Shown piece by piece: positions 29,606 through 33,593 of a stretch of DNA of 64,000 nucleotides. The stretch is taken from positions 578,679 through 642,678 of the forward strand of contig JALMLS010000255.1 of NCBI GenBank assembly GCA_038496445.1. The letters are read 5' to 3'. The stretch is from Trichosphaerium sp. ATCC 40318 (lineage: Eukaryota; Protista; Tubulinea). The position numbers and the translations under genes are program-made. How positions within the stretch are numbered: position 1 is the stretch's first letter; every line of letters begins with the position of its first letter. The notes beneath the pieces are model-generated. The model worked only from the letters and a program-made list of their open reading frames with translations, made no database searches and was not told where the DNA came from.

Positions 29606-30046
29606 ATGACGTTAGAGATGTATTTACTGATCTATGGCTGTATTATAATACTGACCATTACAGCATACCTTACCTGTACTATAGAGCCATGGTTTAAATT
29701 AAAACATGAAGATTGCTATCTGTTGCATCTTCCAGTTGAGATTCAGCTCGATATTATTGATCTAGACTCATCCACGTATTTAAATTTTATATGGCCATTA
29801 CTTTCAAAGCAGACAGCGATGGTGACGAGATTTGATAGTAGCATGAAGAAGCATGGGAAATGGCAGAGAAGAACAATAGATAACCACCTTGTTTGGCAGG
29901 AATATTGGAAACATGGTAAACAACACGGATACTGCAAACGTTGGCACCGCAATGGCAGGTTACAGGAGCAACGTGATTATATCAATGGCATAATGGTAGA
30001 GCACAAAAATTGGAATGATAAGGGACAGTTATGGTTTAAGTACTAG
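29606..30046 (+). CDS. F-box-like plus MORN-variant repeat protein with hydrophobic N-terminus; intronless
   Basis: LLHLPVEIQLDI..WPLLSK, then KHGKW, QHGYCKRWHRNGRL; same family as 1-1841. Confidence 0.75.
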   Translation: MTLEMYLLIYGCIIILTITAYLTCTIEPWFKLKHEDCYLLHLPVEIQLDIIDLDSSTYLNFIWPLLSKQTAMVTRFDSSMKKHGKWQRRTIDNHLVWQEYWKHGKQHGYCKRWHRNGRLQEQRDYINGIMVEHKNWNDKGQLWFKY

Positions 30047-30174: not shown

Positions 30175-33100
30175 TTACTCCTTTTTCTCTTGTTTATCCT
30201 TTTCATACTCTTTATCAAGTACTTTTTGAGCCAATACACACTTATCAGTGTTGTTCTGCTTCTCGGGAATAGTAAACTCGTGATCCATGTACCACCTAAA
30301 CAAATCAACTGTAAGCAATAAAACAAAGCAAAGACCGAATTGTACATTTGTTTAATATGCTCAGAAACGTCATTAGCTGTGTCTTTCAAGACAACAATAT
30401 CGCGTAGCGTTTGTCCTTTATGAGGAACATCTGAAAGGATATCCAAGAATGACTCTGTAGTAGATGGTTTGTCAATCACAATCTTTTCAATGAATGACAA
30501 AGGTACAAATGAAGGCAAGTGCACTTCGATTTGAGTGTGGCCGTTTGTGTTTAGATAAGCCTCAATTATATCGTGAGCTGTTGGGTTTTTAATAATAGGA
30601 TGAGGTTCAGAATATTTATCAGGTGATACTTTGTCGCCCAGCATTAGTTTCATTGAGCATTCAATATCCATTGCTAGAACTTCCTTCCATTTCTCTTCTG
30701 AAACGTGTAACAAGTCTCTATGATTTAAGAAAACAGCCTTCGCAACAGTTTATTGAGGTGGAACAACAACAAAGTTCGTACCTCTGCCTTTTGACTTCTT
30801 TGTATAGTGTCATCCTATTTGATACATTTAGCTTAAAGTCTATATGTATTCTACAACGGACCTTAGTAGACCAAGGTCTTCTGTTACTAAGAATGGATGG
30901 AGTGTAGTAGTAAATACTCGACATTGGAGACATGTTGCAATCCAAGTGCTTCAAAATTTCTATGCAAAGTGTCACACTTTATACATCAAAGAAAAATTAG
31001 CAACATGTTACCTTCGTTTAGAACGATGTGTATCGGACCGTATTTGTCAAAATTGTTGGAGCCATGTGTAGCAAATACGTGCTTGTTTGTACCCATTGTC
31101 TTGTCTTTTATATTACCAAATCCAGGCGTTCTTGCTGTGAGATCTGATAAATATTTTTCACCAATCTCTTCTGAAATATCTGAAAACTAATAAGAAGCAC
31201 TTAACCAGAAACCGTGTACCCCCAAGAAGCGGTATGTAAGATTCTGTTTGTAGCATTTCAACTACTTCCTTTTGAAATCTAAATAAGGTAGTTATATAAG
31301 AGAAGTAAGTTGTTCGGAGCGCTTTTCCGCGAATGTATAATTTGAGAATAAAACATAGTTTCAGTCAAAATAAATCACGTGTTGATAAGAAAATGTGTTA
31401 ATTTGGCCAAGTTTACTCTACGTTCTTGTACTCATACCTTTTCTGTTTACCTGCAACATCTTCACTGATTTGCGAGAAGCGGCCAGATCGCAAAAGAACC
31501 ATAAGGACACAGTAAACAACGTACTTTACAACAAGTTTGTAGCGCTTTTTCTTTTTATCTTTAGACAATTTTTCTTTTGGAGTGTGGAGGGATAATAGTT
31601 TACTGATTTTGTGACTATTAGTAACACGCCTCCATATGTATTTTTTAGGATGTGTAGCAAATCTTTCTGAAAGCAAATCAAATCGGGATCTGAAACCACC
31701 TACAAAAAATATAAAGCTTGTGTGATTTACAGTTTCCTCACCAGAGTTGATGATCCTGATAAAAGTGGATACTGTACATCTATGAACCGGCTTACATTTC
31801 TCAAGGAATGATATTATCTCTTTATTATAACTAATTGCATAGTTGCCTAAGTGTTAAGTAACTTTAGGCATTTATCTGACAAATAGATTAAAATGGTCGT
31901 ACCATTTTTTTCAATAAAGCGGAGTATTCTTCTCTTTAACGATTCTGTATTCTCACTAAAGTTGATACCATAATTTAAACCTCTGACACCACAGCCATCT
32001 TTTCTCATGTACACGTTTAGTTAAAAATGATTTCGGATTTTTTGTGGTTTTTTTTTTTTGGATACCTTTCGCTTTTATACTTGGTGTTTGTATTTCGAAG
32101 ACAGAGCATCTCTGTTCAAGGGCTTTCTTGAACACTTTATATGCAGTATTGTCAAACAATACAATACGAACATGTGATAAATTAAATCCATTTTTTGATG
32201 AAAGACCAAATATAGCATTAAACATAAATCTAGCAACAACCTCAACTGGCCATGAGCTCTCTCCAGTTCCTTGAATCAATTTAGTTAGTTCCCGTATTCT
32301 AATGGCTGACCTATTGCTGGAAAAGACACTGAGTTAAATTCTGCATCCATGCAAGCATGTAACACTTTTGATATCTGTTTGCGAAATGCTAAGTTCTGGT
32401 AGACTTCTGGATTATATTTTGGAGCAAACGCATGAACTATAGCTTCCACTCCTTGTGCTGCAAGGTTTCCACTCGGCGTTATAATACAACCTTATCAGAA
32501 TTAAACAAGTAAATAGGCTAATAATGTTACCTCCACTCTTCAAAGGACCGTTTTCAGTCACATGTACATCACACAGCGGTTGTATTCCAGCCTTGAAAAC
32601 AAAGTAGTTTTAGAACAGTTGAAGAAACACTATACCTTTGATACAATCGCTTTCGCAGAACCTCCTTTATTTTTCATATGTGAGTCGCAAGGGCTCACTA
32701 TTACCTCAGAGCTCTCTGCTGAGATGTCACCAACAACAAGCTCCACTTTGAGAAATAAGAGAGGGAGTAACAACAAAATTGATTTGTACCAGTAACCCCG
32801 TTCTTTGTTCCACCAATTGATTTTGTGATATTCAACGGCCATCTCCGGATGTGCCATGCATACAAAAGGGCAATTGAATGTGATTTCTGTGTTGCAATGA
32901 ATCGTATCTTTCCAACAGACGACTCATCAACTGTACTGAACACCTAAATTGAGTTAATATTAGTAAAAAAACCTGTTCTCACCTCCGTTAGTGCAAGAGC
33001 AAATGCTTTGCTTTCTTCGCTAGAACCACAACGTAACGGTATGCCAAGACTACACATTTGGAAAGACGAAGCTAGCTTCCATATATCCAAAAGTACTTCC

Positions 33101-33593
33101 TCTAGTTGCCTGCAATATCAACGTGTTAAAAGAGAATTTTTTTTTCAATTTCACGTGCTTTCCTTCCGCTGGATTGTAAATTAAAAACCTTTCACAAGAA
33201 TAACCATCCGCTGCACAAGACACAATGCTTCTATTTTCAAGTGCTTCAAGTGCTTTTTTAATGGATCTAGGTTTTATAAGCCCACGTGATCAAAAAATAA
33301 TCACGTCATAATTTTTTCTGGCGTTTTCAGAGGACGTACGAAATACAAGGATAACAGTCTTCAGCGTGTTCCCTCGTTTGTTGTTTGTTGTATTCGGTCA
33401 ATAACCCTTCAGCATCATGTTTTGTGATAACAAGAGCTTCTACTCCTGTATTTTTAAGTCCCCCACATGAATAAACTTGAAGGCGAATGCCTTCCTTAGT
33501 AGTGTGGTTTGCTAGCGGCTTTCCATTGTAATTAACACCAACTAGTACTGGATCTACTTTTGTATCTTCTTCGGTACTGGGTCTATTTCCCAT
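30175..33593 (-). CDS. Macrodomain protein (one degenerate plus one clear macro) with C-terminal putative ADP-ribosyltransferase-fold domain
   Basis: VELVVGDI..SEVIVSP..GGSAKAI, ITPSGNL, IVHAFAP and SVSFPAIGTG. The C-terminal part has VHRC..IINSGGFRS, HVFAT..YG.I.IVL and QIEVHLP..VP...IEKIVI. Confidence 0.8.

What the first reader, a model, noticed from the sequence alone, without database searches (positions are those of the whole stretch)
30175..33593. Myristoylated macrodomain protein fused to a putative DarT-like/QxE ADP-ribosyltransferase domain
Seen: MGNRPS start (Gly2/Ser6), a degenerate macro-like region, and a clear macrodomain with IVSPCD where hydrolases have IVNAAN. The C-terminal domain has motifs in ART-fold order: beta1 PVHR followed by IINSGGFRS (His at 31782-84), beta2 HVFAT..YGPIHIVL (~31070), and HTQIEVHLP..VP...IEKIVI (Glu at 30525-27). 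Known: DarT has H.T...L..IL..G.L.S and QAE..V...VP...I..I, pairs with the DarG macrodomain in anti-phage defence, and QxE marks nucleic-acid-modifying ARTs such as pierisin and scabin. Animal PARP9/14/15 use macro+ART in antiviral immunity. Inference: a non-PARP, membrane-targeted reader/writer ADP-ribosylation module in a protist, possibly defensive. It sits tail-to-tail with an F-box/MORN gene.
Basis: partly seen in the sequence, partly recalled or inferred. Interest (0 to 1): 0.75.

Follow-up and report, generated by a model that had tools for sequence, protein, structure and literature searches.

The report
Myristoyl-tagged macrodomain fused to new ART-fold domain
An expressed 17-exon amoeba gene joins an ADP-ribose-binding macrodomain to a domain with no recognisable sequence family, whose predicted fold is that of the bacterial ADP-ribosyltransferases DarT, SopF and OspC3. 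This points to an undescribed eukaryotic ADP-ribosylation enzyme family.

Summary
The observation largely holds. A 17-exon gene on the minus strand (CDS 30175-33593) starts MGNRPS. A public transcript contig that matches the window at 100% confirms 11 of the 16 splice junctions.

The C-terminal ~420 aa match no Pfam, PADLOC or PDB sequence. An AlphaFold model built only from family members (pLDDT 65, pTM 0.58) was compared with 48,161 PDB chains. Its six best matches were all ART-fold enzymes: four DarT (Z 7.5-8.4), Tpt1 and SopF. OspC3 and CopC followed.

The family motif H-x3-E-x-H-x-P is invariant, and E-x-H-x-P matches the catalytic motif of OspC/CopC. The Q of "QxE" is not conserved. The "degenerate first macro" found no support.

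The family is tiny. There are four macro-fused paralogs and two genes in the same genome that carry the domain behind a bacterial-type PARG, plus three fragments from other organisms. This scan had already reported the PARG fusion on other DNA of this genome (s1-404259).

Best reading: a divergent, probably active ADP-ribosyltransferase tethered to an ADP-ribose reader and to membranes. Its target is unknown. It is DarT-like in fold but not a DarT family member.

The parts
30175..33593 (-). Coding region of the gene: 17 exons, about 830 aa. The mRNA 3' end reaches 30032.
   Evidence: Stop-to-stop frames. Transcript contig L011 is 100% identical to the window and gives the exon blocks from 32590 to 30032. 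An in-frame TAG precedes the ATG.
33340..33593 (-). Exon 1. It carries the N-terminal MGNRPS motif (Gly2, Ser6; codons 33576-33593), a candidate N-myristoylation site.
   Evidence: The paralogs start MGNRSS and MGNTAS.
32814..33266 (-). Exons 2-4 (33155-33266; about 32983-33109; 32814-32943). An N-terminal region of unknown fold, conserved in two paralogs. The exon 2/3 junction is not resolved: a canonical GT..AG intron 33100-33154 would keep the frame.
   Evidence: Conservation at 41-72% in L006 and L007. No Pfam, PDB or hhalign support for a macro fold.
32066..32745 (-). Macrodomain. Exons 32636-32745 (ELVVGDI..IVSPCD..KGG), 32531-32591, 32311-32490 and 32066-32269 (FPAIGTGESSWP...).
   Evidence: PF01661 hits. 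PARP14, PARP15, PARP9 and macroH2A macros are the best PDB sequence matches. Junctions from 32531 downward are confirmed by cDNA.
31903..31998 (-). Linker exon between the macrodomain and the C-terminal domain.
   Evidence: cDNA block.
31742..31846 (-). First exon of the ART-fold domain. It holds predicted beta1 with His168 of P0001 (codon 31782-31784) and helix alpha1 (STFIRIINSG).
   Evidence: Model strand 28-31 and helix 33-41, pLDDT 70-88. The motif P-x-H-R-C..F..[IV]..SG is conserved in L006, L007, L008 and L009.
31220..31699 (-). Exons 31438-31699 and 31220-31278. They encode predicted beta2 (GFR) followed by a helical, Lys-rich insertion of about 115 residues between beta2 and beta3.
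   Evidence: cDNA. Model helices 48-164, mostly at pLDDT below 50.
31012..31179 (-). Exon with motif 2. KHVFATHG (Phe324) is predicted beta3 and YGPIHIVL is predicted beta4.
   Evidence: Conserved in L008, L009, L013 and L014.
30782..30959 (-). Exons 30862-30959 (DCNMSPMSSIYYY..RRPW) and 30782-30814 (DDTIQRSQKAE).
   Evidence: cDNA blocks and the P0001 sequence. The RPW motif is shared with L013 and L014.
30346..30737 (-). Largest exon. It holds the invariant motif H455-x3-E459-x-H461-x-P463-x3-P467. The Glu codon is 30525-30527. Predicted beta5/beta6 hairpin.
   Evidence: Invariant columns in A2. Model strands 320-322 and 332-338 at pLDDT 85-96. hhalign places it on the catalytic QPEFHVP of OspC.
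30175..30295 (-). Last coding exon, an acidic/Lys-rich tail, with the TAA stop at 30175-30177.
   Evidence: cDNA block 30295-30032 and the P0001 C-terminus.

Best explanation
The gene encodes a protein of about 830 aa with four parts.
1. An N-terminal Met-Gly...Ser motif that would be N-myristoylated (inferred).
2. A conserved region of about 210 aa with unknown fold.
3. A macrodomain of the PARP14/macroH2A type. It lacks the Asn-Ala-Ala-Asn hydrolase signature, so it is more likely an ADP-ribose binder than an eraser (inferred).
4. A C-terminal domain of about 420 aa from a previously unclassified family that adopts the ADP-ribosyltransferase (ART) fold (predicted).

In the ART-fold domain, His168 lies on beta1 and is followed by the usual alpha1 helix. 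Phe324 lies on beta3. The invariant Glu459-x-His461 opens beta5. A helical insertion of about 115 residues sits between beta2 and beta3.

I propose that the domain binds NAD+ and transfers ADP-ribose to a target that is still unknown. The attached macrodomain would either read the product, for localisation or feed-forward, or hold the enzyme in check in cis. Lipidation would place the module on a membrane.

Two other genes in the genome carry the same domain behind a bacterial-type PARG. The family is therefore repeatedly wired to ADP-ribose-handling modules.
For: Gene and expression
- Transcript contig L011 is 100% identical to the window and is spliced.
- Paralog exons have dN/dS 0.15-0.46.

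Fold
- The AF2 model was built from an alignment of family members only. It has pLDDT 65 and pTM 0.58, with the core at 70-96.
- In the VIA-align search of 48,161 chains, ranks 1-6 are all ART-fold enzymes: Mtb DarT (Z 8.4, 148 aa, 3.2 A), Thermus DarT (7.9), E. coli DarT1 (7.8, 176 aa), Thermosipho DarTG (7.5), yeast Tpt1 (7.5) and SopF (7.2, 190 aa). OspC3 and CopC score 5.1-5.4.
- Foldseek ranks 1-4 are SopF twice (best E 0.069, prob 0.84) and DarT twice.
- In the re-alignment, all 11 top chains are ARTs, then Z drops to 3.8.

Motifs
- H-x3-E-x-H-x-P-x3-P is invariant in 8 sequences.
- E-x-H-x-P equals the essential E326/H328 of OspC3 and E325/H327 of CopC (PMC9239266; OspC alignment invariants).
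- hhalign's best local match falls on that motif each time.
- Language-model features of residues 300-525 put the OspC family first (0.92). DUF3626, DUF3841 and DarT come lower.

Context
- The domain is fused to a macro in 3 genes (a fourth close paralog shows only its C-terminal part) and to a bacterial-type PARG in 2 genes of the same genome.
- Gly2 and Ser6 are conserved in the paralogs.
Against: - No structural match is statistically strong. Foldseek E is above 0.001, and Z 7-8 is the typical best score even for models without true relatives (notes).
- The model is of medium quality, and three of the five AF2 models were poorer.
- Sequence tests are negative or non-significant. There is no Pfam, PADLOC or PDB hit. 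The PF06128 and PF14487 searches of the genome found nothing, but they also found nothing in the control genomes, so they are uninformative.
- hhalign against OspC gives P of about 0.1, and 5 of 60 shuffled controls reach the same score.
- The aromatic residue on beta3 is not invariant: it is Ile in L014 and, by eye in an exon not in the alignments, Leu in L009.
- I could not measure whether His168 and Glu459 converge in one pocket.
- Catalysis, NAD+ binding, ADP-ribose binding and myristoylation are all untested.
Confidence: 0.6

Rival explanations
1. The domain is a DarT-type enzyme that ADP-ribosylates nucleic-acid bases, and the fused macrodomain acts as a built-in DarG-like antidote in a defence module.
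For: DarT structures are the four best VIA-align matches and cover about 74% of the DarT chain. The offset of Glu459 from the end of the aligned range (55 residues) is close to that of DarT E160 from its C-terminus (49 residues) (E160 from PMC5179494). The writer-plus-macro pairing mirrors DarT-DarG.
Against: There is no DarT Pfam or PADLOC match (the genome search is uninformative because its controls also failed). DarT scores only 0.84 by language-model features. The Q of 'QxE' is not conserved in the family. The macro is of the PARP14/macroH2A type rather than TARG1/DarG, and it lacks the usual hydrolase Asn. A myristoylated membrane protein is an odd fit for a DNA-modifying enzyme. SopF and OspC3, which modify proteins, match about as well.
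Confidence: 0.2
2. The domain has the ART fold but a different chemistry. It could be a Tpt1/KptA-like RNA 2'-phosphotransferase, or an NAD+ glycohydrolase whose ADP-ribose product is sensed by the macrodomain.
For: Yeast Tpt1 aligns at Z 7.5 over 111 of its 120 residues, and mouse Tpt1 at Z 4.8. In the alignments made here the only invariant polar residues found are His, Glu and His.
Against: By my own knowledge, Tpt1 uses an Arg-His-Arg-Arg tetrad and lacks the catalytic Glu. Here Glu459 is invariant, and it matches the transferase Glu of OspC/CopC. There is no Pfam Tpt1 hit.
Confidence: 0.1
3. The ART resemblance is an artefact of a medium-quality model, or the domain is a non-catalytic scaffold. 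The conserved His-Glu-His could then be, for example, a metal site of an unrelated enzyme.
For: All Z values are in the range that unrelated models can reach (note). Foldseek E is above 0.001. The sequence comparisons are not significant. H-x3-E-x-H could bind a metal ion.
Against: The model's alignment held no ART sequence, yet 11 of 11 top re-aligned chains and 6 of 6 top chains among 48,161 are ARTs. The three conserved motifs fall on the strands that carry the catalytic triad in ARTs. The fusions to macro and PARG point independently to ADP-ribose chemistry. An earlier agent reported the same fold for the PARG-fused paralog (s1-404259; I did not check its model).
Confidence: 0.12

Closest known systems
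DarT (DUF4433, PF14487) of the DarT-DarG toxin-antitoxin system
   Same: It is the best structural match: Z 7.5-8.4 over 148-176 aligned residues, covering most of the DarT chain. Both have an N-terminal His strand followed by a helix, and an invariant Glu at the start of the beta5-like strand. Both writers are paired with a macrodomain.
   Different: No sequence model detects the relationship. This domain has a helical insertion of about 115 residues and is twice as long. It is fused rather than operon-paired. The macro is of the PARP14/macroH2A class, not the TARG1/DarG class. The gene is eukaryotic, has introns and carries a myristoylation motif. The target is unknown.
OspC3 / CopC arginine ADP-riboxanases (PF06128)
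   Same: Both share the motif E-x-H-x-P at the catalytic Glu (the window copy even has Q-x-E-x-H-x-P). A candidate His-Phe-Glu arrangement resembles CopC's H137-F183-E325. OspC is the top language-model match (0.92). The structural match is Z 5.1-5.4.
   Different: There is no Pfam match, and the profile-profile score is not significant (P about 0.1). This protein has no ankyrin-repeat domain and no evidence of calmodulin dependence. The spacing of the His motif differs. OspC-family proteins are secreted bacterial effectors, whereas this is an endogenous eukaryotic gene.
Salmonella SopF (ADP-ribosylates ATP6V0C)
   Same: It is the top Foldseek match (E 0.069, prob 0.84) and has the longest structural alignment (190 residues, Z 7.2). 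It is an ART core with helical elaborations.
   Different: Identity is 10-14% and there is no sequence-level link. SopF needs ARF1 as a cofactor. Nothing comparable is known for this protein.
Animal macro-PARPs (PARP9, PARP14, PARP15)
   Same: One polypeptide joins macrodomain(s) to an ART-fold catalytic domain. The macro here is closest in sequence to PARP14, PARP15 and PARP9 macros (E 4e-6 to 1e-4).
   Different: The catalytic domain is not a PARP. There is no PF00644 hit, and no PARP is among the listed structural matches. Lipid anchoring is predicted.
PARG-fused paralogs in the same genome (contigs C81 and C86; earlier finding s1-404259)
   Same: They carry the same C-terminal domain family with all three motifs. 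They are also coupled to an ADP-ribose-handling module.
   Different: The partner is a bacterial-type PARG (an eraser) plus a C-terminal FAMeT-like domain, instead of the N-terminal region and macrodomain. Identity in the motif regions is only about 40%.

Membership tests
Macro domain (PF01661) | Pfam HMM match above the gathering score | tested here: met
   24.1 bits against a cut-off of 22 on P0001. 22.6 bits on exon 32288-32491 alone. PDB macro hits down to E 4e-6.
Macro domain (PF01661) | Hydrolase-type signature N-A-A-N and G-G-G loop (MacroD-like erasers) | tested here: not met
   The sequence reads IVSPCD...KNKGGSAKAI, and the paralogs keep SPCD. Whether ADP-ribose is still bound cannot be told from sequence.
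DarT (PF14487 / DUF4433) | Sequence-profile membership | tested here: not met
   No PF14487 hit on P0001 at E<=1. No PADLOC DarT model hit. The search of the whole genome also found nothing, but its control genomes did not respond either, so that search is uninformative.
DarT (PF14487 / DUF4433) | ART fold superposable on DarT structures | tested here: met
   Predicted model against 7yk3_C (Z 8.4), 7omy and 7omw (8.1) and 8baq (7.8). These are ranks 1-4 of 48,161 chains. The model is of medium quality.
DarT (PF14487 / DUF4433) | Completely conserved catalytic Glu (E160 in T. aquaticus DarT) | tested here: inconclusive
   An invariant Glu459 opens the beta5-like strand. Its equivalence to E160 is inferred only from collinear offsets (PMC5179494). 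No residue-level superposition was available.
DarT (PF14487 / DUF4433) | Partner macrodomain of the DarG/TARG1 type that reverses the modification | tested here: not met
   The fused macro is closest to PARP14, PARP15 and PARP9 macros and to macroH2A. No TARG1 or DarG chain is among the 27 PDB sequence hits.
DarT (PF14487 / DUF4433) | ADP-ribosylation of thymidine or guanosine in ssDNA | not testable with these tools
   Needs a biochemical assay.
OspC family ADP-riboxanase (PF06128) | Sequence-profile membership | tested here: not met
   No PF06128 hit (the genome search is uninformative because the control genomes did not respond). hhalign against a 34-sequence OspC alignment gives P 0.12-0.18, and shuffled controls reach the same score in 5 of 60 runs.
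OspC family ADP-riboxanase (PF06128) | Catalytic E-x-H (OspC3 E326/H328; CopC E325/H327), followed by a conserved Pro | tested here: met
   E459-V-H461-L-P463 is invariant in the family. The OspC invariants are E325, H327 and P329. hhalign aligns the two motifs. Their role is documented in PMC9239266.
OspC family ADP-riboxanase (PF06128) | C-terminal ankyrin-repeat substrate-binding domain | tested here: not met
   The protein ends about 75 residues after the ART core. There is no ankyrin Pfam hit.
PARP catalytic domain (PF00644) | Sequence-profile or fold match to PARP catalytic domains | tested here: not met
   No PF00644 hit. No PARP chain appears among the listed Foldseek or VIA-align matches.
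N-myristoylated proteins | Met-Gly start with a small or uncharged residue at position 3, Ser/Thr at position 6 and no Pro at position 7 | tested here: met
   MGNRPST here, with MGNRSSA and MGNTASA in the paralogs. The motif is necessary but not sufficient. Lipidation itself is not testable here.

The most novel reading that the evidence does not exclude
Eukaryotes possess their own DarT/SopF/OspC-like ADP-ribosyltransferase family, invisible to sequence searches. In this amoeba it is built into membrane-anchored writer-reader proteins (macro fusion) and writer-eraser proteins (PARG fusion). These would modify a non-canonical target, such as a nucleic-acid base or an arginine or glutamine of a host or invader protein, as part of cell-autonomous immunity against giant viruses or intracellular bacteria.
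Probability: 0.2. Interest if true: 0.85.

Novelty: new variant of a known kind. Interest (0 to 1): 0.62.

Why it matters
Macro-plus-ART proteins are known in animals (PARP9, PARP14, PARP15), and DarT-DarG pairs are known in bacteria. DarT-, SopF- and OspC-type transferases have so far been described as bacterial toxins and effectors. One paper explicitly raises the possibility of a 'DarT-like ART' acting in animal cells (PMC8501950).

This gene gives a concrete, expressed eukaryotic candidate, together with its PARG-fused relatives. The catalytic residues to mutate are clear: His168, Glu459 and His461. If the domain is active, it widens the ART superfamily in eukaryotes. It would also offer a natural single-chain writer-reader module for studying how ADP-ribosylation is confined to a membrane.

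Tried and rejected
- Exon-by-exon scans of the C-terminal exons found nothing in Pfam or PADLOC. The whole-transcript product also found nothing in Pfam or by PDB sequence search.
- The big HMMER search with a four-paralog profile gave only the gene's own product plus two fragments.
- Two word-based searches gave only the gene's own product.
- The metagenome scan gave one fragment. The viral scan gave none. The genome-contig scan could not run.
- MAFFT misplaced short exon fragments, and several alignments were discarded (A3, A5, A11, A12).
- The first AF2 run, with a thin alignment, was unusable (pLDDT 51), and its Foldseek hits were meaningless.
- Homology to OspC could not be made significant by hhalign, even with a re-built alignment and global mode.
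- BFVD gave only weak hits: a DUF3626 phage protein, giant-virus ORFans and baculovirus ORF30/32. I therefore claim no link to giant viruses.
- The 'first degenerate macro' was tested and found no support.
I replaced it with coordinate-based references.
All whole-domain work used the natural spliced transcript L011/P0001.
Full report
**Organism and locus.** The window has about 37% G+C and short introns. Its assembly is 70.28 Mb in 642 contigs. These figures fit the published Trichosphaerium sp. genome: 70.87 Mb, 37.69% GC and a mean intron of 75 bp (PMC10521059). Earlier notes of this scan give the same name. I did not prove the identity.

**Gene model.** The finding is a minus-strand gene. 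I read it exon by exon and did not join the window's exons. A public JGI contig, L011 (Ga0186627_101933), is a spliced transcript of this very gene. It is 100% identical to the window in 12 blocks from 32590 down to 30032. Its ORF is P0001 (558 aa), which was returned by the big protein search. L011 and P0001 served as the natural joined sequence.

The CDS has 17 exons and runs from the ATG at 33593 to the TAA at 30175-30177. An in-frame TAG lies just upstream of the ATG. My hand model was wrong in one place: the transcript shows an extra 33-nt exon at 30782-30814.

Two points stay open.
- The exon 2/3 junction is not covered by the cDNA. A canonical GT..AG intron at 33100-33154 would keep the frame.
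- The transcript contig lacks 23 nt (32457-32479) inside a macro exon. The genome frame is intact there and is conserved in the paralogs.

**Check of the observation.**
- MGNRPS is the start. Two paralogs begin MGNRSS and MGNTAS, so Gly2 and Ser6 are conserved.
- The macrodomain is real. PF01661 scores E 1e-4 on one exon and 24.1 bits on P0001. The best PDB sequence matches are PARP14, PARP15 and PARP9 macros and macroH2A.
- 'IVSPCD' replaces the usual IVNAAN and is kept in the paralogs.
- The proposed first 'degenerate macro' (exons 1-4) found no support in Pfam, in PDB profile searches or in hhalign against the true macro exons. The only weak hit of exon 1 is a 27-residue match to a ricin-B-type module (E 0.0018).
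- The neighbouring ORF at 29606-30046 is tail-to-tail and overlaps the 3' UTR by 15 nt. It gave no F-box or MORN hit.

**The family.**
- The largest C-terminal exon has three paralogs in the genome at 70-75% identity. Two of them (contigs C144 and C279) share the whole architecture, including the N-terminus.
- dN/dS between the copies is 0.15-0.46.
- Two more distant members (C81 and C86) carry the same three motifs behind a bacterial-type PARG (GGG..AQEE-like and GCGAFGNP motifs) and ahead of a FAMeT-like domain. These are evidently the genes an earlier agent reported (s1-404259).
- Outside this genome I found only fragments. P0002/L013 is a JGI metatranscriptome contig that also has motif 2 upstream of an in-frame TAA. 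P0003/L014 is a 57% GC eukaryotic contig with three matching exons. L010 is a third fragment.
- A profile search of the genome finds six members in all.

**What the C-terminal domain is.** Sequence methods are silent. There is no Pfam, PADLOC or PDB sequence match. The Pfam DarT and OspC model searches of the genome also found nothing, but their control genomes did not respond either, so those two searches are uninformative.

A first AF2 model with a thin alignment failed (pLDDT 51). After adding L013 and L014 rows, the model of P0001 residues 140-534 reached pLDDT 65 and pTM 0.58, with the conserved core at 70-96. The alignment contained only family members, so any resemblance to known folds is not built in.

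- A Foldseek-independent search of 48,161 PDB chains put six ART-fold enzymes in the first six places: Mtb DarT (Z 8.4), Thermus DarT (7.9), E. coli DarT1 (7.8), Thermosipho DarTG (7.5), yeast Tpt1 (7.5) and SopF (7.2). OspC3 and CopC scored 5.1-5.4.
- Foldseek's first four were SopF twice and DarT twice, with best E 0.069.
- On re-alignment, all 11 top chains were ARTs before a drop to Z 3.8.

None of these scores is strong alone, and the tool notes warn that Z 7-8 is common. The exclusive enrichment for one fold is what carries weight.

In the model the three motifs sit where ART catalytic residues sit.
- V167-H168-R169-C170 form beta1. Helix alpha1 (STFIRIINSG) and a short beta2 follow.
- V323-F324-A325 and I338-L342 are the next strands.
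- E459-V460-H461 open beta5, and I471-D477 form beta6.
- A long, low-confidence helical insertion (residues about 187-303) lies between beta2 and beta3.

**Relation to known families.** The E-x-H-x-P motif equals the essential E326/H328 of OspC3 and E325/H327 of CopC, which has a His-Phe-Glu triad (PMC9239266). In a 34-sequence OspC alignment, E325, H327 and P329 are invariant. hhalign's best local alignment falls on that motif every time. Its P value is only about 0.1, and 5 of 60 shuffled controls score as high. Language-model features of residues 300-525 rank OspC first (0.92). DUF3626, DUF3841 and DarT rank lower.

I therefore place the domain in the ART superfamily, near the DarT/SopF/OspC group. 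I do not file it as a member of any of these families.

**Mechanism.** What is shown:
- The gene is expressed and spliced.
- It has a macrodomain.
- It has a conserved domain family under purifying selection.
- That family is repeatedly fused to ADP-ribose modules.

What is predicted: the ART fold, with His, Phe and Glu on the canonical strands.

What is inferred: NAD+-dependent ADP-ribosyl transfer, a reader or cis-regulatory role for the macrodomain (which lacks the hydrolase Asn), and membrane anchoring through myristoylation.

The target, whether protein or nucleic acid, is unknown. A defensive role is speculation. The amoeba's heavy traffic with giant viruses (PMC10521059) makes it a reasonable idea. 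My viral fold search gave nothing significant.

**Novelty.** I found no paper describing a eukaryotic DarT/SopF/OspC-like ART or its fusion to a macrodomain. One paper only speculates about a 'DarT-like ART' acting in animal cells (PMC8501950). The scan itself had already noted the sister PARG fusion on other DNA of this genome, so the domain family is not new to the scan. The macro-fused, myristoyl-tagged branch is.

Noticed in passing
window 32457-32479 (minus strand), against L011 positions 60-75: The transcript contig lacks 23 nt that the genome has inside the macro exon. This frameshifts the contig's ORF, so P0001 starts at VEAIVHAF. The genome frame is intact and conserved in the paralogs. 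The cause could be an assembly artefact, a polymorphism or odd processing.
   Followed up: partly
L013:372-374: The homologous JGI metatranscriptome contig has a single in-frame TAA between the motif-2 and motif-3 parts of the domain. This could mean a TAA-reassigned genetic code in that organism, a retained intron or an error.
   Followed up: no
window 33441-33521 (exon 1, residues 25-51): There is a weak 27-residue similarity to ricin-B-type carbohydrate-binding modules of xylanases (1knl, E 0.0018). The N-terminal region may not be macro-like at all.
   Followed up: no
window 29606-30046 (+): This is a 146-aa ORF tail-to-tail with the gene. Its last 15 nt overlap the gene's 3' UTR, which ends at 30032. 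By eye it has MORN-variant-like repeats, but it gave no Pfam hit at E<=0.01.
   Followed up: partly
L008 (G000:C81:143000-152999) and L009 (G000:C86:148500-158499), minus strand: Two genes combine a bacterial-type PARG, the same ART-fold domain and a C-terminal FAMeT-like region. P0002 from another organism has the ART-fold C-terminus followed by PF12248 (E 1.5e-18).
   Followed up: partly
G000:C60:112966-113545: Exons on this contig match only the FAMeT-like (PF12248) part of P0002. This is a separate FAMeT-like gene in the genome.
   Followed up: no
L014 (Logan SRR6476074 contig, 57% GC), 1204-1293, 1727-1831, 2753-2863: Three exons of a homolog of the ART-fold domain lie in an unrelated GC-rich eukaryote. 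The family therefore reaches beyond Trichosphaerium-like amoebae.
   Followed up: partly
window 33100-33154: The exon 2/3 junction cannot be made with the obvious GT (33154) and the CAG acceptor (33110) without breaking the frame. An AG at 33100-33101 works but drops three conserved residues (QLE).
   Followed up: partly
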